From: Tubulanus polymorphus
Taxonomy: Eukaryota; Animalia; Nemertea
Reading direction: 5' to 3'
Assembly (NCBI RefSeq): GCF_964204645.1
Contig: NC_134033.1
Coordinates: 10,982,655 to 11,046,654, forward strand
DNA length: 64,000 nucleotides
Shown: positions 1,439 to 50,446 of the stretch, piece by piece
How positions within the stretch are numbered: position 1 is the stretch's first letter
How the letters are laid out: each line of letters opens with the position of its first letter
Made by a program: the position numbers and the translations under genes
The notes under the pieces: model-generated
Databases searched by the model: none
What the model was told of the DNA's origin: nothing
The model's input: the letters and a program-made list of their open reading frames with translations, nothing else

Positions 1439-2675
1439 TATTTGTTACTGCTGTTTTCAAAGAAATGAACTCGATTACTGATTGATTTGGGAACAGACTA
1501 TAGAATAAATCGAGGTTGGAAGTGGAACAGACTATAGAATAAATTGATGTGGGAGGAGGTTGAGGTGAAATCAGAAACAAATTCAGATATTTGCAGATAT
1601 TCCTCAAAACTCAAGGAATAACCTCACTGTTTTAAGTAAATTTTTCGGCTACTAATGCGCTAGGGGTGAAACGAGCTCTTCACTTGAGATGATAAGAAAA
1701 ATGGATGCGTTTATTTGTTGATCTATATTTTGCTATATTTCATACACGTATACATCACTTAAGTATTATAAATACTGCACTAATTGATATGAATTTGATC
1801 TTCAATATCATTTTCATTATGATATTCTATTATTGCTCTAATTATAATCGTCATAACTAATGTCATATATATATATATATAATTATTATTATTACTATTA
1901 TTATTATGATATTCAATATGGTTAAATAATATATATAAACATATACGTATGTTATGTTAGCCAGCGCTTATTTGCTAGGCTATTTTTTCATCATTAATGC
2001 ATTTGAGCAATTATTTTTTTTTCTCGAAATTCATGAGATGAAAATGCATGCGCCGTGTAAAGTATACGGTAATTTCGGAGATAATGAACAATTTAAGACG
2101 TATTGAAAGTGAATTCGTTGAGACTCACTTTTAAGCTGGATGCACACGGCAGTCAAAAACACAGAAAACAGTTTTTGTAACGCAGTATGACGCACTAGAA
2201 AACAAAAACATTGATGTTTTCTTTTTGGTTCGGGATTGGAAAAAACAAGAAAAAGCTAATGGAGATTTTAGTTCATCTAAAGCCCTATCACCAGCCCTCC
2301 TTCATTGTTTTATAAGACTATTAGCCGGCAAAGCTTTCTTCTAGAACACTTAAGATAGCTGACAGTGGCCATATTGGATTCTTACGTTGTTCATATTGGA
2401 TCTCATTCCTGCTATATACAATCTACAGTTTTTACTGCTGAATATTCTATAACTTGGTACCGGAAGTGGCATATATGCAGCCTCTACTAGACTTTCGCTT
2501 ACTGGTTGAAACAGTTTTGCTCCGGGATATTTCAAGAAGGTTGGAGGCCGTCAATAAAAGGGGTGAAAACAACTCTTTAGTTCGCATTTGTTTAGGAACC
2601 CTGCCACAGGAATGTCACAAACATTTATTCCGATTTACCACCATATTTTTTGCGTCGCATTCATTTTAATGATAT

Positions 2676-2688
2676 TTATTATTATTGA

Positions 2689-2740
<52 letters not shown>
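2676..2740. repeat. (ATT)n microsatellite; others at ~9475-9545, 13529-13578, 21890-21930
   Basis: Direct inspection; explains poly-Ile ORFs. Confidence 0.95.
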
Positions 2741-2824
2741 GCATCATCATTTTCGCGCTTGGCCGATGCATTGTTCGCTGTAGATGTTTGAGTGCCGTAC
2801 GTTTTGTGTCTTTTTTTCTTACAG

Positions 2825-3130
2825 TGGAGACAAACGCCAAACGAATCATCCTCAGCCTCCACTTCTAGTGCCGCTGCCGCTGCTGCTGCTGCTACTGCCG
2901 CTGCTGCCGTTGCATCGTCCACATCCGCGCCTTCCGTTGCTTCTACTTCTACTACTACCACTACCACGCCTCGGTATACGCCGGTCGTGGCGGCCGCGGC
3001 GGCTAGTGCCCCCGGCGGCGTCGCGACGCTTAATCATCACCACGGCACATTCCCGCCGACGCCGTCGCCAACGGCCGGCTATATCGATGGTTATCGGCTA
3101 CGATTTACATCGCCGGAAATGTTGCCTTAT
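2825..3130 (+). CDS. mbl: Muscleblind candidate exon (Ala/Ser/Thr-rich, phase 0-0, 102 codons: WRQTPNESS...FTSPEMLPY), probably an alternative cassette
   Basis: Acceptor ttttttcttacag|2825, donor TAT|gtgagt at 3131; GC-rich open frame in AT-rich background; 306 nt keeps frame with exon 5530. Confidence 0.6.
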
Positions 3131-5529: not shown

Positions 5530-5733
5530 GCTCATCCGACTTACTTCAACCCCGGTCTCCAAACTGCTGCATCATTCAATCCATACCTAACATCGGGCGT
5601 CGCCATGCCCGGCATCATGCAGACGCAGGACGGTTCACCGGTCCCGCAACACGCGGGTCAAATACAGACCCTACCGGTACAACAGGCTGGACCTACGGCT
5701 AAAACAACCGTACCTCGAGCTGATAGACTGGAG
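5530..5733 (+). CDS. mbl: Muscleblind linker exon AHPTYFNPGLQTAASFNPYL...VPRADRLE
   Basis: tatag|GCT and GAG|gtaagc; 204 nt; contains the MBNL-typical FNPYL and R(T/S/A)DRLE motifs that precede ZnF3. Confidence 0.93.
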
Positions 5734-8700: not shown

Positions 8701-9645
8701 ATTTAGGTAGGGTTTCGTGCTGTGGTAGAGTCTCGCAATGGTTCCTCAGGTTAAAGTCCCTGCCGATTGAGAGTAGCAATCCGGGAGATCGCACGCGGGT
8801 CATTAAAACATGCATCAGTGACTTTCTACTAGCGCTCAGATCCCCTTGTCTGCAGTCGATGACAGTCAGAAAAATATATAAATCTGATACATGTAGATAA
8901 CTTTTATGTCTCTCCCACTTATGACAAACAAAATCCAAATCCTTTTACTCCAATATCGTGGAACGTGTGATCCTTAAGAATATTCCATCAAAATGCCATT
9001 TCTTCTATTTCTAATCAACAATGCAATGATTACAAATTTATTCGAGTGTGATCCGACCAACACGTGCGTAATCCGTCAACACTAGGATAAACCGTTCAAC
9101 TTTGGGATAATACCTCTAAAATGGCCCTCCCCGCATAACAACCATGCAGAAGTATTTTACGTATCTCCACAATCGCCACTTTTTAAAACAACAAATGCCA
9201 AGAAAATCACTCCATATAATTAGATTATGTATTTATATTATCGATAACAGTAAAGAATGGTTAGGGTTAGTATAAATCTGAATGATTGTTAGAATACTGA
9301 TAGGTATCTATAATGATCTCCATAGCCACAGTTTATTGGAGATCCCACATAATCTCCGCAGGCACAGGAGATCACATAAACCAACGGATCAATTATTTAG
9401 TTCTAAAGATGGTTTCCACAGATATTTCATTATCGAATATCTAAATAGTTATTATTATAATCATATTATCATTAACATTATTATTATTATTATCATTATT
9501 ATTATTTTTATTATTATTATTATTATTATTATCATTATCAATATTATGATTATCATAATACTTGACATTGCCAAACGACCGGATATTTCCCATCCTAATA
9601 TATATCGTGTTCACTCACATTGTGTATACTACGTGCATTTATTAG

Positions 9646-9882
9646 GTTTGTCGAGAGTTTCAAAGAGGTAGTTGTACTCGTCAGCCTAGTGATTGTCGCT
9701 TTGCGCACCCCCCTGACCATGTACATGTGGACAACGGTGACAACCACGTCACCGTCTGCATGGATTTTATAAAGGGCAAATGTTCGAGAGACTCGTGTCG
9801 CTACTTCCATCCCCCTCCGCACCTCCAAGCTCAGATCAAAGCCACGCAACAACGTGCTACTCTCGCTGCTCAACAAGCCATG
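9646..9882 (+). CDS. mbl: Muscleblind tandem CCCH ZnF3-4 exon: [23 protein letters not shown]...[32 protein letters not shown]...AM
   Basis: ttag|GTT and ATG|gtaggg; 237 nt; Cx7Cx6Cx3H plus Cx7Cx4Cx3H spacing and HPPxHLQAxIKA are diagnostic for the MBNL second finger pair. Confidence 0.97.
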
Positions 9883-18922: not shown

Positions 18923-19067
18923 ATCTGTTACAACTACTTATTAATATTGGTGCTTTTCTTTTTATTTTTTATTTCCCACGATGCATTGCTGCTTGCTGTT
19001 GTCATGTGCCGCCAACCCTGCCATGCTATTGGCCAATTGCGATCATGTGCTCTGCATAACTAATTAG
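18923..19067 (+). promoter_or_regulatory. AG-exclusion zone / distant branch point with ~9 YGCY (MBNL) motifs upstream of the NLS exon
   Basis: No AG between 18923 and 19065; TTAAT at 18941-18945 followed by a pyrimidine tract, then TGCT/TGCC/CGCC cluster. Confidence 0.8.
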
Positions 19068-19133
19068 CAGCCAGTGGTAGAGGTGTTGAAGGGCAAGAAG
19101 CGTACACTCGATCCTGCCGATGAAATCGTCCTG
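19068..19133 (+). CDS. mbl: Muscleblind NLS cassette exon QPVVEVLKGKKRTLDPADEIVL (counterpart of the vertebrate MBNL1 54-nt exon 5)
   Basis: taattag|CAG (NAGNAG alternative start 19071) and CTG|gtactat; 66/63 nt, phase 0-0; KKR basic motif between ZnF4 and the KRPA exon; 143-nt AG-free YGCY-rich zone upstream. Confidence 0.85.
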
Positions 19134-25665: not shown

Positions 25666-25831
25666 GGAATGACTGGAATGCCAGGAATGGTACCGATGAT
25701 GAAACGGCCAGCAGTAGCGGATGCAAAGAGTGGTCTACCAGTTTACCAACCGGCGTCTAACGTCGCCGCCTATCAACAAGCGTTAGCCGTTGCGCAATTG
25801 CAACAAGGGCAAGGATATGTACCGGTCTCGT
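25666..25831 (+). CDS. mbl: Muscleblind exon GMTGMPGMVPMMKRPAVADAKSGLPVYQP...GYVPVS (ends phase 1)
   Basis: attag|GGA and T|gtaagt; 166 nt; KRPA motif and YQQALA motif typical of MBNL C-terminal region. Confidence 0.92.
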
Positions 25832-27818: not shown

Positions 27819-29792
27819 TTAGCGACACGAGAAAATGTTTAATGAGGCAGTAGTTTGAATTTGGCCCATGGAATAGCAACATCCAATATGAACACCTAGG
27901 GCCTCACTATGTTACACGCTGTTGCTCTTGCAGAGAATATATTCGCTGCTACGTGAAGATAATAGCAGCAGCAGCAGCAGCAGCCGGGAGCTCTAAAAAC
28001 ACTCTTTTAGAAAATCGAAAGAATATATTTCTGCGTTCATAAAGGTTTCAAATACGTATGAGTATTCAATAACTCTATAGATTCCCCTTGAAATACTCTA
28101 CTAGAAAGTATTCGAACATACTTTCGATCTATCGTTGGTCAATAGGCGGCAATCTAATCTTGGAACTCGGTTATTTTCACTCCGTAGATTCAGTCATTGC
28201 AGAGACAGGATCCGGTGACCGATTCACTATGAGTAAACCACACGCGTCAAACTTTCCAACAAATTCGGCCGATTATTCACTATTCAAGTGGGTTGATGTT
28301 GGTAACCGAATAACTGCCGGTTACCGACGGTTACCGATGTGATGCCGAGCTGAAGATGAAATTTGACGCGTCGTGCCTCAATAATTTATGACTCGCGACG
28401 CATTCAACAGGAGTCAGTTTCATCGGCGATGATGACATATTAGGGAATTTAATACTTGTTATGAGGTGCTCGGTATTCACTGTATGAGCGTCTTGTATGA
28501 TTTTTCCAACAGACAAACGACATCTAGTTTCATAGAGTGCCGTAGCATGAAATTATAAGTGAAATGCTGTGGTAATTCGGGTTTGTAGTTTATGCTGTTC
28601 TAAGAGACCGATCCTTGTTGAAAGTTGCCGAGTGGATTGTAATTCAGGGGCTCGCTGAGGGCTGTTTCTGCTCCAAACACATGGCAGGCATATAGACATA
28701 CAGATATAAGATCCAGTTTTATTTTGTAGCCACTTCCTTCTTGGCGTTTAAATCTGGGGATTTACGAAAAAAAAGATTACAAATCTGCTATTCCACTTGT
28801 GGATCCACCAATCAGCTTTTAATGGACATCAATGCTGCATTTCTTTTTTACGTATGAAAAGGTCATTGTTTAGTTTATGCTGAGGCATGATTCGTCTAAT
28901 TCTGGGTAAAAATTAGCTGAATTTCCTTAGAGTGTCGCGGGAGCAGCATCTAGTGGGATAACCCGGTCGCATAGCGGGATAGTGCATTGCTGTATCGATG
29001 CAATTCCTATAATAAAGTCTCTGACGATACAATCCAATCATGAAACCACCGGTTAGATTCAATCCTGCCGCTGCCGGTGCATGATTTATTTTTCGTGTGA
29101 AATCGTTTTTTAAGTAAGGCAGTAATTAATCATAGTATCTCCAGAGCGCCAAGGAGCATTACGCGTTCCGCTCGGCGTGAAGGTGCGACTGCTCTTCAGA
29201 CTCAAATTTGATTAAAATCGTCTCCCGTTTGCTGTCATCGCTGTCTGCCGTAATAACTTATTGATAAATAAGAAACAATGTGTTCAGACAGATTTATTCG
29301 CGATCACTCTCTTTTCGGTCATGTGTCTGCTTCAGCGGCGGTTGCCGTCGACAACGATGAATCAATCGAGATTTTAATGCGTATCGCGCGCGTGCAAAAT
29401 GAAACCGGATTATAACCTGATGATGAAATAATTTCTTTTCCGATTCCATTTTGAAATTGTTACTTTTGAAATATCGAAATTTAACGATCCTACGATCATT
29501 AATGATCATATGAATATTAAACCTATCGGAAAAAGATCATTAGCGATCATTAACAATTCATCGCAGCTTGTCCAGTTCAGATAAGGTACTCACAAATTAC
29601 CCTCTAACATCACAACTTCTGCATGAATTGAAAATTATTTAAGTTTTTGAAGGCAATATCCATCATTGCGATCGTTTCCGGCCTTTTCGCCCCATTTGTT
29701 ACGTACATCAAATGTAGAGTCTTTTAAATTAGTCATTTAATCAGTTCGTATTCTTCTGATCGAGTTCATAGATGGTTTAGAAATCGAGAAAG

Positions 29793-30083
29793 TTATGGAC
29801 GTAAAACTGATGGCTGAAATTAATGTTTATGCTCTGTGTTTTTTCTCTTTCATAAACTCACAAAAATCGCACACCTATAAAACACTCGCGTGTGTGTGTG
29901 TGTTCACTGCTTGTCTCTACCTACCACATATACCACTGCATGCAACGCCTCCTAACACTATTCGCTCGCCACTGCTGCTTTCTCGACCACTACCAAAATA
30001 CTCGGGGTGCACCGACTGACCTCACTTGCCTGTGCTTGCTGCCGTTTTGCACACATACCGCGCAACACCACGCACACCAACAG
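29793..30083 (+). promoter_or_regulatory. 289-nt AG-exclusion zone with ~11 YGCY motifs and a TGCATG upstream of the frame-switch exon
   Basis: No AG between 29793 and 30081; candidate branch points TTAAT (~29820), CTAAC (~29952), CTGAC (~30016). Confidence 0.75.
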
Positions 30084-30199
30084 ACCCCACGACTGCCACC
30101 GCCTTGCTTTCGGGACAGACTTCACCGGTAACTGGTAGCACGGTTCAGCTTACCCACCATCACAATGCTAGCGTCCAATATTTTGACGAAAAAAGTCAG
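30084..30199 (+). CDS. mbl: Muscleblind frame-switch cassette exon (Y)PTTATALLSGQ...VQYFDEKSQ, phase 1 to 0; alternative donor ends exon at 30205 (+VQ)
   Basis: First AG after a 289-nt AG-free zone; open in the incoming phase-1 frame; donors CAG|gtacag (30200) and CAG|gtatcg (30206); 116 or 122 nt puts exon 32939 into the zinc-finger frame. Confidence 0.8.
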
Positions 30200-31440
30200 G
30201 TACAGGTATCGCTTTAACACGCCAAACGAGTTCCCACCAAACGTCTTAATTAGGTTTTTTTTCTGAAACACTTCACTGCTGAGGTCATACAACGCGATAG
30301 AGTACCTAGTCAATCAAATTATTTTGTCTCCAGAATTTAGATATTCCAAACTATCTTACTTTGTGTTTGGTATAGTTTTCATCGATAATTGATTTACTTA
30401 TTTACCTAGGAGAAAGTATGTTAGATTTTAATTGAAATATAAAAGAAGCAGAGGTAACTGGCAAACCTCACTTGCCACGAGGGAAATCCTCGATTGTGAT
30501 AGCAAGTTAGTCCTCATTTCTGGACAGCCTTACGATCGTCAGCACAAGGCAAGACCCCTGCATGAAAACCCCAGCAGTCGAAGTGTTAAGAATGAAACCA
30601 CATGCAATCAAGGTTTTCAATTACTGATTTCAAATACTTTTTTTCCACTTTCGAAACTTACATTACTCTATATTGTTAGTTCCACTTCAAATAGATTTGC
30701 ATAGCTAGAATGTTCTAAGACCTTTGGTGGGAACGCAAGCTTACATGAAGATTACAGGATCTGGATATGACTTCCTTTGATTTCGGATTTTGTATTTGAA
30801 ATCTCGGTTCTCAATTAGATTCAATCATCTCGGTGAATGGAAACTTCATGCATTTGTTTGTATTTGTAATTGTGGTGTTGGATGCTAACACCCTTTGTAT
30901 CGGTAACTCATACTCTTTCAATATCGATGACTTTACAATCATCGCTGAAATTGGAGAGTTTTAGATATCAACCCTGAGAACAATATTTGATACTGGGTCA
31001 AAATTCAATACCTAGGTGTGGGCAAATTATGATATATACCAAGGAACATTGTTGCTGTTCCCCAAGTTTGAGTGTGGTGGTTATTCTACTAATATAAACC
31101 ATTATTATTGCGGTATTCATAATGAGTTACTCGATGCATTGGGTTACTTTTATAAACTCATTCCCAGATTCACGAAAACGTTTTGCCAAATTCATAATTT
31201 GTTCAATTATACCAAACACAAATCAATCTATTCTTAAACATTTTCGTGAAAACTGAGACAAACAAGTTTTTCATTTCAAATTAATCCTTAACAGTTTATC
31301 AAATATTCCTTGCACAAAAGCATTACTTATTGATGCCCTCTCACAAAATGGCCTCAGAAATAATAGAATAATAATAACTCCTGTCTTGTGTGTTATACTA
31401 ATTTTGATATATTAACGAAACCCTTCGCTTTGCTACGCAT

Positions 31441-31457: not shown

Positions 31458-32938
31458 TGGTTCTAACCTTACCCACAACTGTTTGTCACACTAATGCACA
31501 TAGCTTGCTGCACGCCTTACTACATTCCAAAATTAGCGGATATACTTTTTGCATAAGCCAGGTCTGTTTATGCCGAAGAAGCAGCACCTGAACCAACGGA
31601 AAATATATAGATATCTGTTTGGATAATATTAATAAAATAGGTCGATAGAATAGATATACAGATTTTATCCTGCTAAACGCTAAACGCTGTTCCACTCGAG
31701 TGCACTTATTTTTTTTTTCCTGATGTCAAAGTCCTGATCGAGGTCGACTGATTGCAACTAACACCTTTTCCATGTTGCATAGGAATCTCAGGAGGTGTTC
31801 AACTTGCGGATCTCATCTGGAAAGCATCGTTCAAAATTTTTAAAGCTTCAAATTGTACTGATTGAATTTCTTGAGAGCGTGTCGTGCCGTGGAGTGTTTA
31901 TAAGGGAGTTTGATGTTTGTTTGATAAGAGGCGGAATCAAATATCCAGTAGGAAGGGGCATAGTATGCGCTGTATCTCGCTGTCTCAAATTTAGAGGAAA
32001 GATTTTTTGTCCACCATGCCACCAGCTATCCCCACAGTATAGATTAATACTAAGATTAGTTCATCTTCACTGGAACTGCGGCAAGTAAGGATCAACAAGC
32101 GGCCTTCAAAATCTTCTTCATTTCAGAACTCAAAATAATCCAGTTCTAAATTGTTTCTAAATGAACAAATTTTGACCCAAAAAATGCCGGCTGGTGGGAT
32201 AGCTGCGTTTGAGGCGGGATAGCTGTGTTTGAGGGAAGCCTGTCAATTCCAATCAGTGATTTCCATACCCAAAAATTGTATATGAAAATCATGATGATTA
32301 AGTTCCATTCACAAGTGAAGTACAGTTACAGTTTGAAGGTATTGATCGAAATTTGAGTTGGTTTGGCTGTTTAATATCTCACTACAGCCACTAGGCAGAT
32401 TCTTCACACTTGCTACAGTAGACTTGTAGGTATCTGATTCAAACGGTAAAAGGGAAATGTGAAGTCATGGCCTGCAGCAATATGTGTCATAGTGACTACA
32501 ACATCGTGGAAGGTTTATATCAGAACAAAATTCACTGTGAAATATTCTTTGTGCTAATAACATGTTTGCAGCCATATTGGAACCAGAAATTTCGTTAAGA
32601 TAAATTATTTTGAGGGATTTGGGGATTTGTGCCCATTTGCACAGTCTGGGCTGATGGCCCAAAGTGTTAAAACTGATCTGAAGTTATTAGATAGGATAAG
32701 AAGTAAGAAAAGCTAAGACTGGTCTTAAATCTTACTAAAAGTTAAAACATGTAAACTCCACTGAGAAACTAGTCTCCTGGGCCTAATTCTGTATGGTCCA
32801 TTTCCAAAACTGATCTCAGTTGTTACTTTTAGCCCATATACCGGTACATATAACAGCCCATCTATTACATTAACCCTGGTAGTTTTGTAAAATGTATTCA
32901 GTTATATGATTTCCGATTTATATTTCTATTTTCTATAG

Positions 32939-33023
32939 TTACTGGACACCATCCCGGTGTGCCGCGATTTTAAGGCTGGCCAGTGTTTGCGGCCACAATG
33001 CAAGTACGTTCACCTAGTTGAAG
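32939..33023 (+). CDS. mbl: Muscleblind dual-frame exon: phase 1 gives (F)TGHHPGVPRF* (TAA 32971-32973); phase 0 gives LLDTIPVCRDFKAGQCLRPQCKYVHLVE (CCCH finger)
   Basis: ttttctatag|TT and AAG|gtaagt; both frames give recognisable Muscleblind motifs. Confidence 0.92.
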
Positions 33024-33425: not shown

Positions 33426-33547
33426 ATTACGTTGAAGTTATGGATGGTAAAGTTACTGTGTGTCGCGATGCGGCTAAAGGAAAATGCACTCGACCGATGT
33501 GTAGATATTACCATATTCCTGCGGTAATGCCCCACATAATTCTGTGA
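33426..33547 (+). CDS. mbl: Muscleblind last coding exon (D)YVEVMDGKVTVCRDAAKGKCTRPMCRYYHIPAVMPHIIL* (CCCH finger)
   Basis: ttctttcggcag|AT, phase 1 matches the donor at 33024; Cx7Cx4Cx3H; TGA 33545-33547. Confidence 0.93.
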
Positions 33548-33726: not shown

Positions 33727-36700
33727 TGATATTAAGATGGTTTATAATAATACTTAAGTATCGTATATCGATTGCGTGTTCATAAAGATTTGATAAATAC
33801 TACTAAGACAAGGCTAATGCCAGTTCGTATTCTGATGTCTACTTGGCCATTCAGCGAATTCTCAAGCGCCACCTCTTGGAAGAACAGTCCAATGTTTAAG
33901 AAAACTTCTATATCCACATCTGGAACTAACCTATACATTTATTCATTCGACTAGTTTAAGAGAACGGCGCTTTTTTTAGGAAGGACGACTGTCTGAATTT
34001 TTTCTAAATCGAGTGGCTGAATTTTTTAGCAACTTCATCATTTGAACAAATGACGAAATTAGGTTTTTGTAATTTTTTCTATGAGAGCTAAGGGAAAAAG
34101 GTTGACGCGATGGAACCATAGCTTATCGGAGTGAAGTAACTCTTCATTTCAGCTCACTATCATTTTGAGTGAAATATAATCGGAATTATATTTTCGGAAT
34201 ATTTGAATCTATGTCCAACGAGTTATCTTAACTGTTCAATTCAAAATTTCTTCATTTTCAATTAATCATTTAATGCTTGTTTGGATTTTTTATACAGTGC
34301 ATTTGTTCTCATCTTTAAAACTAGTATTTAATGTTAATAGAACTGAAGAAAAATTGACTCCTCGAACTAGATTTCAACTAATTTATTCCTAAAAGTATAT
34401 CTTCCGACAAAAGACAACTAGACTAGTTTTATGAAAATTCTATGATACAACAAAATTCAACGCTGCAAACTTTTTTTTGAAATATTTTTCTAGATAGACT
34501 TACTCGCTCCGATTGTTATTTAAATGTGATAAAATTAACGTTCTTTCCAACTCGTCCTTTTGAATTTTTCATACTCGTATTTATTTTCTTATTTGTGAAA
34601 AGAAAAAAGAATATGTTCAATCAATGCTGAAACTGGTTTTGTAAATTGTGCACGCGTTGATTTACACGCGATAAGAAAGCGAGGAATCGGTATCAGTGAC
34701 AGACGGATTTATGTATAAAAATGGAAATATTCAGCTGAAAAGTCGATGGGAATTATGAATTGTCAAAATAAGTGTGTAGTTTATAAGATTAGATTCTTAG
34801 GTTGCCTAGCAACCGGCCCTGAATTGTGATCACATGATCTGAAACAGAAATTATTATCCAATCAGAAATGGGTATATATCGAAATATTCCACTCATTCAC
34901 TGTGTTGACATAGTCAACTAGAGCTGGGCCTGGGCGCTATACACATCAGAGCCTGCGCGCTGTACACATCAGAGCCTGCGCGCATAGTTATGACTTCTTT
35001 ATTGTCAGGATTAAGATTGGTCTTAATTTGTTAGGGATTTGTAGATGGCGTAAATTTGGTTCAAACCAAACCAAAAGTCTTTTTATGGAATCGAAATGAG
35101 CTAGGATCGGTCTTGAGTTTTAAGTCGTGACTGTGTAAACTGAGCTTTAGGCATCAAATGCACCGTAGCGCTTGTGGCTTTCGAATTCGTGCTGGGAAGA
35201 AATTTGTATTTTTAGAATCGACAGTCTATTCGAGGTAGAGACGAGATGAATGAGTGTACGTTTTCAACCACAGTAGAATACCAAATTTGTCTTCCTTTTT
35301 AAAAAAAAAGAAAATTGCGTTGCATGACTAGTGCCAGATGCGTATGTTGCTTGTATATTCTTTTCGTATCGGTATATCAATAGTTTATTGACATAAATCG
35401 ACGTGTAGAAAATCTTTGTGTTCATCTGTTATATACATAAAAAATCTCGCATTGTCAAATTCTGCGGTTTATATCGCATGAATCGCAAAAGTACCACTAC
35501 CACGCCATTAGCACCACATTCGCTGCTTAAATGCGCCAAAAATGGCCACGCTTCGGGCGCGGTATAGTGCCGAGATACCACACATCGCAATGAAGTATGT
35601 CTAAGCAAATTTTTTCAATCCAGTCGACTCGCGATTTGAAATTGATGTTCTATTTTCTCTCTCCATATTAAAACAAGAATTTAACGTATTGACTTATATG
35701 TAAAGTTCATGATTTTTATAACGAACTCTGGTGCTCTCTGAAGTGATGCATTTATAAAATTTCTAACATTTTTTCCGAGCACTAAATTCTTCATGTATCT
35801 AGGCATCGAGTCATTCGCAAACGAATATTTTACCGCGTTAATTGCTGCAGTGCAAATAATGTCCATGCAGTTTCTGCAAATCAGGAAAAAAATATGTTTG
35901 AAACATTTATGAAAATTCAATCGCTCGTTGATGAGGGGATATTTACCTGCCCGATCGTGCCTGCCTTCTGGTAGTGGGAAAAAAATCAGTTATGAATTTA
36001 GCCAGTGAATTTCGGAATTGTGAGATGACTCAAAGCAACAAGTCTGCGCTTCTAGGTCTGTACCGATTACAATCGCTAAGAAAAACATAAGTCGTGATTA
36101 CATGTGCTGCCCCCTATTGATTACCGTGGAAACCAATTGAATCCGCAGCCCTCTATTGATTATATGAGCGATCGATGTGTTGCCCCTATTGATTTCCATG
36201 GTAACCAAAATGTTGGTTACCCCGACGACCGCATCAGTGTTGGTTATTATAATATTGTACGAGTGCTAAAAAGTTAGTAGTTATCGAATTAGTAAATAAG
36301 TTTTTAATTAATCGATTAATTGTATCTAATTATTATAATTTAATTAAGTAATTAATTAGTGTAAAATAATTGAAAAAAAACGAGGAAAATGCTCTGTGTG
36401 TATTGAATATAGTCGAACGTGTTTGTATGAGCCGTTAATATTTAACAGACACGTGGATCCGTCGTGAATTATGAGAAAATGTGCCATAAAAATCGCGTGA
36501 ACGCCATCTATTAGTAGTGAAATGTATCACATCGGCGTAACGCGATTGTAGATATTACGATTGTGCTATTGTTTCATTCTTGTGAATAAGAAAATTTTAC
36601 AACTTTGCTAATTAGTGTATCTTTTTAATAAGCAAACGGATGATTATCAATTGATTTTAATTATTTCGCGATCTTAAGAAATTTTTCTTGTCTTTTTTTT

Positions 36701-48127: not shown

Positions 48128-50009
48128 GTCGGCCAAGTATTTCCTCGAGTTGAGCTGCATTGACAATGATGTTCAGGGTCGGAACCATAGAAAAAGACAT
48201 TGGGGGAGGGGTGGGTTCTGAAAAGGTAAGTGCAACAAGTGCCGAAAAATAGAAGCCTTCAGACGCAATTTCCTGCTGATACATAGACGACTTGACTACA
48301 AACGATTAACGCGGCTAAATTACGATCAGTTTCGACTCTGATCGACGAAGAGATCTAAGAAATACAGTAAAACCCGTTAAAATCCGGATCGGCTTAATCC
48401 GGATTTTGGTCTAATCAAGACAATATTTTGCAGTCCTTCGATATACGAGAAAATGACTTATTTAATCAGGATTTCCCTTTAACGAGATAAATTTTCAGGT
48501 CCCAAGAGGAATGGACATGTTGAGCTAATTGGCAATACGGACCTGCGTGCATATTTTGGTAACTTTGTTTATCGAGTGCTCAATGTTAACTGCGCCTCCT
48601 GTGATATTAGAATAGATAGGTGTTCTCTATATAGAACTGCGCGTTTCGAAATGAAATATTAACAACAGCGCCTAAGAGTTCTAAGTTTTTCGTTTCTGAC
48701 GTAGAGAGGTGAAATTATCGTTTTTCGATAAAACACTTAACGGTACATATAACGTATTTCATATCGCCCATGTATATAAGCACCTGTCGCTTCCGTTCAA
48801 TCGTTATACTAAACCAGGGCAAAGTGCGCGCTGCCTCGTGATATATAACTCGGGTTTAGATAAAGCGTCAATTCTGTACGGAATCACGTCTCGGGATAGA
48901 TGGGGAAAGTCTGGAAGTCTAGGCTGGGGTTATTCCTGCTATTACTAATTTGACTCATACAGGTCGCACGCCCGAAAACGTGAGGGCGTTTACAGGTTTG
49001 GGAAATGTATGAAAAACCTCCAGCAAAATTCCTGCGAATTCCAGCAATTTCGTCATCGAAAGTGATTCACAAATGTAGAATTTTCTAACATTCCATTTAT
49101 ACGTATAAAATACCAATCTAGAATAACATACATTTAAACATTTTGGACAAAACATTTTCTTTTCATTTTCAAATGAAAACCCGTTTGTCATTTTATACGA
49201 ATGAATTTATCGCGTCATTTATTCTCAGCACATTCCGATTGAATGTGGGTGTCTCGAGGACTATCTTGTGTTTATGCTCGAATCGAAATGAAAAGTCTAA
49301 AACAAATCATTTTTGTAATATAACAGGAAGACTTCCTTAGCATTATTTATTTTACAGTTTTTCAACGCTACAAATTTCAAGATATACGCTTCATTTTAAA
49401 CATATTAGGATGATTAAGCAGTGCTTAAAAACGCTCAAAATGCTTGGAAATTAGGACTAATTTTCTGGGGGGGGGGGGGGGGTGACCAGGTAATGTTTGT
49501 TTGTTTTTTGGACCATAGCCAAACGAACTCGCCACAACAACATGCACCGAACCCGGTTCATGGTTTATGGGCCCGTTATTCATATTTGAATCTAAATTCC
49601 GGTTAATTAGTTCACTTTAAACATTTTAACTATTTAACGGATTCCACATTCCAATAAAGCAAAATACACTAAAATGCGTACTGTACTCCTTAATGGAAAA
49701 TCACTAGGGATTGTCAATTACTAGTTTAGGAACCCGCTGCTAGTGATTCTAAATTGCACTCTCTCCAGTGAAAGGCGAAAATGTCATCTACGTAGAACAG
49801 GCCCGTAGCGTGGGAGGAGGGGGATGGTTTGGTAAAAGGGGGTTACGCAGAACCGCCCAAAATCCGAAAGTTGTCCGCTTTTGAAAAATGAACTTGTAAC
49901 ACTTCCGCTTGCTGGCCTCCTCGGTCGCTGGGAGTATAGAGACGCTAATAGAGAGAGCAGGCGTCTATGCATTATTTAAAAACACATTTACACATTCAAT
50001 TTTTTCAAA

Positions 50010-50223
<214 letters not shown>

Positions 50224-50446
50224 TATGTAAATTATTCTTTAGATATTTCTAACAGGTTTCACGACTGCGAATGACAGCTAAAGAGTCGTCCCTTTAGAAA
50301 ATCATAAACCAGTTTTCGTTTTTAATTCGATAGTTTTTAGTATCTGCCGCGTGTTCGCGACTACCTATGATTATAATAGAATATATAGGTCTATACACAT
50401 TTTTACTCATATATTAACATAGATATACGAAGTGATTTCTGATAAA

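What the first reader, a model, noticed from the sequence alone, without database searches (positions are those of the whole stretch)
29793..30083. Second, longer AG-exclusion zone packed with MBNL motifs gates the zinc-finger frame switch
Seen: 289 nt with no AG (very unlikely by chance), ~11 YGCY motifs, a (TG)n tract and TGCATG at 29937-29942, ending exactly at the in-frame acceptor. It has the same architecture as the NLS exon. Inference: Mbl binding represses this exon, so high Mbl removes both its NLS and its third finger pair, giving a two-output negative feedback loop.
Basis: partly seen in the sequence, partly recalled or inferred. Interest (0 to 1): 0.8.

Follow-up and report, generated by a model that had tools for sequence, protein, structure and literature searches.

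The report
AG-free gate of muscleblind switch exon
A 289-base stretch with no AG lies just before a small optional exon of an invertebrate muscleblind gene; it is most likely the control region that decides whether the protein carries four or six RNA-binding zinc fingers.

Summary
Window 29793-30081 is a 289-nt AG-free run, the longest in the window. It holds 11 YGCY, a (GT)7 tract and one TGCATG, and it ends at the AG of an acceptor.

Homology shows that 30084-30199 is a real 116-nt coding exon of muscleblind (mbl). With the exon included, the reading frame runs into a third CCCH finger pair (32939-33023, 33426-33547). With it skipped, the finger-5 exon is read in another frame and gives ..VPVSFTGHHPGVPRF*. 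That tail closely resembles one shared by nemertean, mollusc, brachiopod, chelicerate and dipteran Mbl proteins.

The orthologous exon in Littorina, oyster and pearl oyster also has a length of 2 mod 3. In each species it is preceded by one of the two longest AG-free gaps of the locus (243, 171 and 157 nt), and each gap holds one TGCATG. Oyster transcript contigs skip this exon, so there it is a cassette.

Best reading: a distant-branch-point 3' splice site whose AG-free spacer is a platform for regulators.

Mbl self-repression is plausible but unproven:
- The YGCY count does not exceed dinucleotide-preserving shuffles.
- YGCY is weak in the two bivalves.
- The motif conserved across species is the Rbfox-type UGCAUG.
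- The oyster transcripts that skip this exon keep the NLS-like exon.

No RNA reads for this animal could be obtained.

The parts
29793..30081 (+). AG-exclusion zone (289 nt), the last part of the 4.25-kb intron between exons 25666-25831 and 30084-30199
   Evidence: longest AG-free gap in the window, 11.5 AG expected; less structured than 99 of 100 shuffles (z=+1.93); unique sequence.
29807..29824 (+). Distal branch-point-like motifs CTGAT (29807) and TTAAT (29820), 15-30 nt inside the 5' edge of the AG-free zone
   Evidence: The placement near the 5' edge of the zone is what the AGEZ model predicts (PMC1431707). Not mapped experimentally.
29834..29851 (+). The only long pyrimidine tract within about 390 nt upstream of the acceptor (13-nt pure run 29839-29851), about 235-250 nt upstream of it
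   Evidence: The last 22 intron bases before the AG have 11 C and no T, so there is no U-rich tract next to the acceptor.
29890..29903 (+). (GT)7 tract, i.e. (UG)n in the RNA
   Evidence: That it is a possible CELF/TDP-43-type site is inference from general knowledge only.
29937..29942 (+). TGCATG (Rbfox-type UGCAUG), 147 nt upstream of the exon
   Evidence: Exactly one TGCATG also lies in the AG-free zone of Littorina (-99), oyster (-81) and Pinctada (-71). Per-zone chance is 0.02-0.05 by mononucleotide shuffles and 0.04-0.23 by dinucleotide shuffles.
29946..29979 (+). YGCY cluster 1 (5 motifs in 34 nt), surrounding the branch-point-like CTAAC at 29952
30016..30043 (+). Proximal branch-point-like CTGAC (30016) followed by YGCY cluster 2 (4 motifs in 17 nt, 30027-30043)
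30082..30083 (+). 3' splice-site AG, the first AG after 289 nt
   Evidence: The frame is confirmed by homology.
30084..30199 (+). 116-nt (2 mod 3) frame-switch cassette exon. It encodes (Y)PTTAT...NASVQYFDEKSQ. The donor CAG|GTACAG is weak, and a second in-frame GT lies 6 nt further on.
   Evidence: It is collinear with ...SVNYFDxNxQ|LLDTLPVC of bivalve, gastropod, scorpion, insect, amphioxus and hemichordate Mbl.
25666..25831 (+). Upstream exon (166 nt, ends in phase 1) encoding ..MMKRPAVADAKSGLPVYQP..GYVPVS
   Evidence: (72% identical to Lineus longissimus Mbl)
32939..33023 (+). Dual-coding finger-5 exon (85 nt). In frame 0 it reads LLDTIPVCRDFKAGQCLRPQCKYVHLVE. After skipping of 30084-30199 it reads (F)TGHHPGVPRF with stop TAA at 32971-32973, 50 nt before the exon end.
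   Evidence: The same overlap is seen in oyster and Pinctada and can be read from the Littorina sequence.
33426..33547 (+). Finger-6 exon up to the stop codon (..CRYYHIPAVMPHIIL*)
   Evidence: 78% identical to the Pinctada protein
18923..19133 (+). Sister module: a 143-nt AG-free zone with 9 YGCY, plus the 66-nt KKR/NLS-like cassette exon (19068-19133)
   Evidence: The same module occurs in oyster (145 nt, 12 YGCY) and coral (127 nt, 9 YGCY).

Best explanation
The AG-free zone is the extended 3' splice-site region of a regulated 116-nt cassette exon (30084-30199) of the muscleblind gene.

The functional branch point(s) and the only real pyrimidine tract lie far upstream, with distal candidates at about 29807-29851. 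The spliceosome therefore has to reach the first downstream AG across up to about 270 nt, and selection has kept every other AG out of that spacer.

The spacer is unstructured and rich in C, U and A. It carries binding motifs for splicing regulators placed between the branch point and the AG: one UGCAUG (Rbfox type), two tight YGCY clusters (Mbl type), a (UG)7 tract and CA-rich runs. Proteins bound there would hinder U2AF/U2 use of this weak site and cause skipping.

Because the exon length is 2 mod 3, inclusion puts the next exon in the frame that encodes zinc fingers 5 and 6. Skipping reads the same exon in another frame and ends the protein with the conserved ..FTGHHPGVPRF tail (MblC-like form).

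Shown here: the zone, the exon, the frames, conservation of the architecture in three molluscs, and alternative use of the orthologous exon in oyster.

Inferred: distant branch-point use, repression as the direction of control, and which proteins act. My odds are about 0.55 for Rbfox-type and about 0.4 for Mbl itself.
For: Zone and statistics.

Exon identity, phase and junctions:
- tblastn of 400 Mbl proteins on the window;
- the conserved pre-finger-5 peptide across Bilateria;
- junction translations.

Frame switch and dual coding. The PRF tail occurs in 33 proteins from six phyla.

Conservation:
- The orthologous exons are 116, 167, 122 and 107 nt, all 2 mod 3, and all have CAG|GTA donors.
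- Their AG-free zones of 289, 243, 171 and 157 nt rank 1st, 2nd, 1st and 2nd among 1617-3102 gaps per locus.
- Each zone holds one TGCATG.
- In the window, oyster and Pinctada a branch-point-like motif and a long pyrimidine tract sit at the 5' edge of the zone.

Alternative use: two Logan oyster transcript contigs join the preceding exon directly to the finger-5 exon, while RefSeq isoforms include the cassette.

Weak local signals: there is no T in the last 22 intron bases, and the donor is non-consensus. The zone folds less well than shuffles in the window and in Littorina.

Precedents:
- AG-exclusion zones mark distant branch points and alternative exons (PMC1431707).
- MBNL1 exon 5 has YGCY clusters and a mapped distant branch point in the upstream intron (PMC5082313).
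- C. elegans mbl-1 exon 7 is repressed by MBL-1 and FOX-1 through upstream YGCY and GCAUG (PMC10773944).
Against:
- Branch points are only motif matches. A proximal CTGAC at -65 could be the main one, which would leave the distal 220 nt of AG depletion unexplained.
- The YGCY count is no higher than in dinucleotide-preserving shuffles and is weak in the two bivalves.
- The window zone does not align at nucleotide level with the mollusc zones, so the conservation is of architecture and motifs only.
- The coral orthologue has an ordinary 19-nt zone.
- The three molluscs are not independent of one another.
Confidence: 0.68

Rival explanations
1. Mbl protein itself binds the YGCY clusters and represses this exon together with the 66-nt NLS-like exon, so high Mbl removes both the nuclear signal and the third finger pair (a two-output negative feedback).
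For: - There are two tight YGCY clusters between the candidate branch points and the AG.
- YGCY is 3.7 times the window background, and Littorina's zone has 16 YGCY (P=0.009 even against dinucleotide shuffles).
- The same gene carries a conserved YGCY-rich AG-free zone at the 66-nt exon.
- Upstream YGCY binding represses MBNL1 exon 5 and C. elegans mbl-1 exon 7 (PMC5082313, PMC10773944).
Against: - The window count equals the dinucleotide-shuffle expectation (P=0.39).
- Oyster and Pinctada have only 3 and 4 YGCY, which is not significant.
- The oyster transcripts that skip this exon include the 66-nt exon, so the two outputs can be uncoupled.
- No binding or dose data exist.
Confidence: 0.3
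2. The architecture is the same, but the factors bound in the zone activate the exon rather than repress it. For example, they might help a weak, distant branch point find the AG, so that the six-finger form is made where those factors are abundant.
For: The exon has intrinsically weak signals yet is included in most annotated mollusc and insect isoforms, so some positive input is needed. The direction of control cannot be read from sequence.
Against: The established position rules for MBNL and Rbfox (my knowledge; echoed for mbl-1 in PMC10773944) associate binding upstream of a cassette exon with skipping. Motifs that lie between the branch point and the AG are placed to block the site, not to help it.
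Confidence: 0.15
3. The AG-free run is a by-product of local G-poor, C/A/T-rich composition, or of chance, and the exon uses an ordinary nearby branch point without special regulation.
For: The zone is G-poor (16% G), and GA is also somewhat depleted (6 observed against 11.5 expected). A CTGAC lies at -65.
Against: - There are 0 AG against 11.5 expected, and 0 of 20000 shuffles were AG-free.
- It is the longest gap of 3102.
- The orthologous acceptor in three other species also carries one of the two longest gaps of its locus.
- The orthologous exon is a proven cassette in oyster.
Confidence: 0.04

Closest known systems
Intronic silencer upstream of vertebrate MBNL1/MBNL2 exon 5 (54-nt NLS exon), autoregulated by MBNL (Gates et al. 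2011 as cited in PMC5082313)
   Same: It is in the same gene family. A YGCY-bearing, AG-poor stretch lies directly upstream of a small alternative cassette exon, and the branch point is distant.
   Different: This is a different exon: the true counterpart of exon 5 in this gene is the 66-nt exon at 19068. The exon encodes no KR nuclear signal. The zone is about twice as long. I found no nucleotide-level conservation with other phyla. The output is a reading-frame switch, not loss of an NLS. Mbl dependence is untested.
C. elegans mbl-1 exon 7, repressed by MBL-1 and FOX-1 through YGCY and GCAUG in the upstream intron (PMC10773944)
   Same: Mbl-type and Rbfox-type motifs are combined in the intron upstream of an alternative mbl exon, in an invertebrate.
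   Different: Exon 7 is the KR/NLS exon. No long AG-free zone or frame switch is described for it. Here nothing has been tested at the bench.
Human exons with AG-dinucleotide exclusion zones and distant branch points (Gooding et al. 2006, PMC1431707)
   Same: Three features match: an AG-free stretch of more than 100 nt ending at the acceptor; a branch-point consensus and pyrimidine tract at the 5' end of the zone; and association with alternative splicing.
   Different: The host is an invertebrate. Conservation of the zone can be followed across at least two lineages. The exon controls which of two overlapping reading frames of the next exon is used.
MblC-type isoform of Drosophila Muscleblind, reported as the isoform conserved from nematodes to flies (PMC2238819)
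   Same: The skipping product here has the KRP-motif exon followed by a short ..VPVSFTGHHPGVPRF tail. That tail closely resembles the one in the dipteran Megaselia and many other protostomes.
   Different: That the Drosophila MblC tail is this same tail is my recollection and was not checked here. The paper does not describe the tail as an out-of-frame reading of a zinc-finger exon.

Membership tests
AG-exclusion-zone / distant-branch-point 3' splice sites (PMC1431707) | AG-free stretch of 100 nt or more that ends at the 3' splice-site AG | tested here: met
   289 nt (29793-30081), the longest gap in the window
AG-exclusion-zone / distant-branch-point 3' splice sites (PMC1431707) | The first AG after the zone is the acceptor actually used | tested here: inconclusive
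   Only this acceptor gives the conserved frame and peptide. The next AG (30116) would give a length of 1 mod 3. No RNA reads from this species were available.
AG-exclusion-zone / distant-branch-point 3' splice sites (PMC1431707) | Branch-point consensus plus pyrimidine tract near the 5' end of the zone | tested here: met
   CTGAT at 29807 and TTAAT at 29820, followed by the pyrimidine tract 29834-29851. Oyster and Pinctada have the same layout. These are motif matches only.
AG-exclusion-zone / distant-branch-point 3' splice sites (PMC1431707) | Experimentally mapped distant branch point | not testable with these tools
   Needs lariat RT-PCR or lariat reads
AG-exclusion-zone / distant-branch-point 3' splice sites (PMC1431707) | The exon is alternatively spliced | tested here: inconclusive
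   Shown for the oyster orthologue: transcript contigs L005 and L006 skip it, while XP isoforms include it. In the window the intact alternative-frame tail and stop imply it. It was not observed in this species.
Mbl/MBNL self-regulated cassette exon (MBNL1 exon 5 / mbl-1 exon 7 type) | Cluster of YGCY motifs in the intron just upstream, above expectation | tested here: inconclusive
   11 observed against 3.0 (window background) and 5.0 (mononucleotide shuffles, P=0.008), but 9.9 in dinucleotide shuffles (P=0.39)
Mbl/MBNL self-regulated cassette exon (MBNL1 exon 5 / mbl-1 exon 7 type) | YGCY cluster conserved at the orthologous exon | tested here: inconclusive
   Littorina has 16 (P=0.009). Oyster has 3 and Pinctada 4, which is not significant.
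Mbl/MBNL self-regulated cassette exon (MBNL1 exon 5 / mbl-1 exon 7 type) | The exon carries the KR motif that completes a bipartite nuclear localisation signal | tested here: not met
   The exon peptide is Thr/Ala/Ser-rich and has no KR. The KKR exon is 19068-19133.
Mbl/MBNL self-regulated cassette exon (MBNL1 exon 5 / mbl-1 exon 7 type) | Inclusion responds to Mbl dose, and Mbl binds the intron | not testable with these tools
   Needs knock-down or over-expression, CLIP and a minigene
Rbfox-regulated cassette exon | (U)GCAUG within about 300 nt of the exon | tested here: met
   TGCATG at 29937-29942, 147 nt upstream
Rbfox-regulated cassette exon | Motif conserved at the orthologous position | tested here: met
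   One TGCATG lies in each of the four AG-free zones. In the three molluscs it aligns in one block. Chance per zone is 0.02-0.23.
Rbfox-regulated cassette exon | Inclusion depends on Rbfox | not testable with these tools
   Needs a genetic or biochemical test

The most novel reading that the evidence does not exclude
An old protostome splicing switch, at least lophotrochozoan and with its exon and phase structure shared with deuterostomes and corals. In it, a cassette exon of length 2 mod 3, guarded by an unusually long AG-free distant-branch-point zone, decides whether Muscleblind is made as the familiar four-finger MblC-like protein or as a six-finger protein that I could not find described in the searched literature. 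It does so by re-framing one dual-coding exon. Mbl itself, together with Rbfox, sets the switch. The gene would then hold two separate self-regulated modules, one for localisation and one for RNA-binding valency.
Probability: 0.3. Interest if true: 0.75.

Novelty: new variant of a known kind. Interest (0 to 1): 0.6.

Why it matters
Muscleblind/MBNL proteins are master regulators of developmental splicing and the key proteins sequestered in myotonic dystrophy. Their self-regulation has so far been tied to a single exon, the NLS exon.

Here the same gene carries a second module of the same build, at a different exon. Its output is the number of zinc-finger pairs (two or three) and the identity of the C-terminus, produced by reading one exon in two frames.

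My full-text searches turned up no paper on a third Mbl finger pair or on the out-of-frame origin of the conserved ..GHPPxVPRF tail. Both are nevertheless visible in database proteins from many phyla.

The zone gives precise, testable targets for asking how an RNA-binding protein tunes its own valency: the UGCAUG, the two YGCY clusters and the candidate branch points.

Tried and rejected
- **RNA-seq evidence.** Only local tools touched it: Python, folding, alignment, and an Rfam scan of 29000-31000.
- **Structured RNA.** There is no Rfam match. The zone folds worse than shuffles in the window and in Littorina, and is unremarkable in the two bivalves. I rejected the idea that a (UG)n:CA-rich helix bridges the distal branch point to the AG. 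It appears in the window's MFE fold only, and the analogous ACC/UGG pairing in Littorina is not predicted.
- **Repeat or transposon.** There is no second copy in the window.
- **Coding potential of the zone itself.** No homology. A ZnF3-like 'CRFAHIPRNTT' in a non-coding frame has E about 1-2 and is explained by YGCY-rich sequence.
- **Nucleotide alignment of the window zone to the mollusc zones.** Not convincing; only the motifs are shared.
- **An extra 87-nt exon like the bivalve one between 25831 and 30084.** None found.
- **Orthologous loci.** Look-ups failed or returned no DNA for Pecten, Glandiceps, Nephila, Lineus, two tick proteins and a mosquito, either not on record or the gene was too long.
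- **Spliced model.** It was never joined for a search. Exons were searched or compared one by one by reference, and only short junction contexts were translated locally.

Full report
**What is in the sequence.** The window is a muscleblind (mbl) locus of an invertebrate, on the + strand.

Between the AG at 29791-29792 and the AG at 30082-30083 there is no AG for 289 nt. This is the longest of the 3102 AG-free gaps in the 64-kb window. The only comparable one, about 49960-50240, is a microsatellite.

- The zone's own base composition predicts 11.5 AG. None of 20000 mononucleotide shuffles was AG-free.
- The zone is unique sequence, matches no Rfam family, and folds less well than 99 of 100 dinucleotide shuffles.
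- It holds 11 YGCY in two tight clusters (29946-29979 and 30027-30043), a (GT)7 tract (29890-29903) and one TGCATG (29937-29942).
- It has four branch-point-like motifs, at 29807, 29820, 29952 and 30016.
- It has one long pyrimidine tract, at 29834-29851.
- The 22 bases before the acceptor AG contain no T at all.

**What the zone precedes.** A HMMER search with the finger exon 9646-9882 returned Mbl proteins. Many of them have three matched stretches, i.e. three tandem CCCH pairs. I laid 150, and later about 400, of these proteins on the window by tblastn. This defines the following exons:

- 5530-5733: linker exon
- 9646-9882: fingers 3 and 4
- 19068-19133: 66-nt KKR exon
- 25666-25831: KRP-motif exon, 166 nt, ending in phase 1
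- 32939-33023: finger 5
- 33426-33547: finger 6 plus stop

The stretch 30084-30199 is open in exactly the frame that phase 1 requires (T+AC gives Tyr). It ends ...NASVQYFDEKSQ at a CAG|GTACAG donor and continues in frame into LLDTIPVC of finger 5.

The peptide ...(N)A.S(V)xY(F)D...Q|LLDTLPVC precedes finger 5 in bivalves, gastropods, a scorpion, spiders, insects, a crustacean, amphioxus and hemichordates. This exon and its acceptor are therefore orthologous to a widely conserved exon.

The third finger pair is old. It is present in corals, hemichordates, ticks, molluscs and Diptera.

**The frame switch.** The exon is 116 nt, which is 2 mod 3. If it is skipped, the T at 25831 joins 32939 and the finger-5 exon is read as FTGHHPGVPRF followed by TAA at 32971-32973. 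That stop lies 50 nt before the exon's end.

This tail closely resembles one found in other animals. Thirty-three of the fetched proteins end ..VPV(S/T)F(A/T)GHP.x(V)xRF. They come from a nemertean, gastropods, bivalves, a brachiopod, ticks, spiders and a fly.

The same overlap of LLDTLPVC.DF with AGHPP.VPRF-stop is present in the oyster and Pinctada genomic exons. It can also be read in the Littorina sequence printed.

Inclusion gives a six-finger protein; skipping gives the four-finger form with the conserved tail.

Exons were compared one by one by reference.

**Related loci.** Genomic mbl loci were obtained for Pinctada imbricata (L001), Magallana gigas (L002), the coral Stylophora (L003) and Littorina saxatilis (L004).

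| Species | Switch exon length (nt) | AG-free zone (nt) | Rank of zone among gaps in the locus | TGCATG position |
|---|---|---|---|---|
| Window | 116 | 289 | 1 of 3102 | -147 |
| Littorina | 167 | 243 | 2 of 1617 | -99 |
| Oyster (M. gigas) | 122 | 171 | 1 of 2086 | -81 |
| Pinctada | 107 | 157 | 2 of 2264 | -71 |

- All four exon lengths are 2 mod 3, and all four exons have CAG|GTA donors.
- Each zone holds exactly one TGCATG.
- In the window, oyster and Pinctada a branch-point-like motif and a long T-rich tract sit at the 5' edge of the zone.
- In the three molluscs the TGCATG lies in an alignable block, but the window zone does not align at nucleotide level.
- The coral orthologue (50 nt, also 2 mod 3) has an ordinary 19-nt zone and no PRF tail. 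The long zone and the dual coding are therefore not ancestral to all animals.

**The exon is alternative, at least in oyster.** Two independent Logan transcript contigs (L005 from SRR11364048, L006 from SRR1987474) are at least 98% identical to the M. gigas locus. Both join the preceding exon (ending at 32700) directly to the finger-5 exon (starting at 35224), which gives ..VPVSIAGHPPSVPRF*. The RefSeq isoforms include the cassette.

Scallops and mussels also have both kinds of product.

These oyster transcripts include the 66-nt NLS-like exon and skip the finger 3/4 exon. Skipping of the switch exon is therefore not tied to skipping of the NLS exon.

**How it most likely works.** An AG-free zone of this length, with the branch-point consensus and pyrimidine tract at its 5' end and no U-tract at the acceptor, is the signature of a distant branch point. 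After lariat formation the first downstream AG is taken, so any other AG in between is selected against. Such sites are enriched at alternative exons (PMC1431707).

The spacer then acts as a landing strip for regulators. Two precedents in this gene family fit this reading:
- Vertebrate MBNL1 exon 5 has YGCY clusters and a mapped distant branch point in an upstream silencer (PMC5082313).
- C. elegans mbl-1 exon 7 is repressed by MBL-1 and FOX-1 through upstream YGCY and GCAUG (PMC10773944).

By analogy I expect factors bound in 29937-30045 to cause skipping.

**Which factors act is open.**
- YGCY is 3.7 times the window background and 2.2 times the mononucleotide-shuffle mean (P=0.008). It is not above dinucleotide-preserving shuffles (P=0.39).
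- YGCY is strong in Littorina (16, P=0.009) but weak in oyster and Pinctada.
- UGCAUG is the one motif present in all four species.
- I therefore put Rbfox-type control at about 0.55 and Mbl self-control at about 0.4. Both may act together.

**Comparison with the known.**
- The architecture belongs to the AG-exclusion-zone class. The zone and motif layout are met, but the branch point is unmapped.
- It resembles the MBNL1 exon 5 and mbl-1 exon 7 modules but is not their orthologue. That role belongs to the 66-nt exon at 19068, whose 143-nt AG-free zone with 9 YGCY is matched in oyster (145 nt, 12 YGCY) and coral (127 nt, 9 YGCY). The switch exon also carries no KR motif.
- What is new is a second module of this build in the same gene, with a different output: finger number and C-terminus, obtained by re-framing a dual-coding exon.
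- Full-text searches found no paper on a third Mbl finger pair or on this origin of the tail. The proteins themselves are in public databases as automatic predictions.

**Limits.**
- No reads from this animal were available. 
- Branch points, direction of regulation and the identity of the regulators are inferences.
- The three comparison species with a long zone are all molluscs, and the species of the window is unknown to me. Its closest exon matches are to the nemertean Lineus longissimus and to molluscs.
My data place the dual coding in the finger-5 exon.

Noticed in passing
window 32939-32973; L002 35224-35258; L001 42242-42276: The finger-5 exon is dual-coding. The out-of-frame reading gives the conserved ..GH(P/H)P.VPRF tail. 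In the window and in oyster its stop lies exactly 50 nt before the last exon junction, within the usual NMD-safe distance. The exon length is 85 nt in the window, oyster, Pinctada and coral.
   Followed up: partly
window 2824-3130: A probable alternative coding exon in the finger 2-3 linker (acceptor cttacag|TGG, donor TAT|GTGAGT). It contains a (GCY)n run that encodes poly-Ala. It has the highest YGCY density in the window (24 in 289 nt), so it is a CUG/GCU-like tract inside mbl's own pre-mRNA.
   Followed up: no
window 9449-9643: A 195-nt AG-free stretch directly upstream of the finger 3/4 exon consists of (ATT)n-like AT-rich microsatellite with only 1 YGCY. Here the AG-free state looks compositional. 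However, oyster transcripts do skip the finger 3/4 exon (L005, L006).
   Followed up: no
L005 and L006 against L002 (22719>29268 and 32700>35224): Oyster transcript contigs skip the finger 3/4 exon and the switch exon but keep the 66-nt KKR exon. The product is a two-finger protein that keeps the KKR (NLS-like) exon and ends in the PRF tail.
   Followed up: partly
window 30200-30214: A second GT lies 6 nt downstream (30206) and would add Val-Gln in frame. Reading through the donor ends the protein at ..KSQVQVSL*. Annotated Ostrea edulis isoforms (..NQQVTCARLCV..) and a Stegodyphus isoform (..GQVLLVL) show such read-through ends, which suggests a third outcome: a retained intron or an alternative 3' end.
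   Followed up: no
window 30040-30072: In a non-coding frame of the AG-free zone the sequence reads CRFAHIPRNTT, resembling the end of finger 3 ([11 protein letters not shown]). E is about 1-2, so this is probably a side effect of YGCY-rich sequence, but a decayed duplicate finger exon cannot be excluded.
   Followed up: no
window 18923-19067; L002 29121-29267; L003 11292-11420: The intron end before the 66-nt KKR exon shares near-identical letters between this animal and oyster (..catgtgctctgcata(a/c)taattag|). It is AG-free and rich in YGCY even in a coral.
   Followed up: partly
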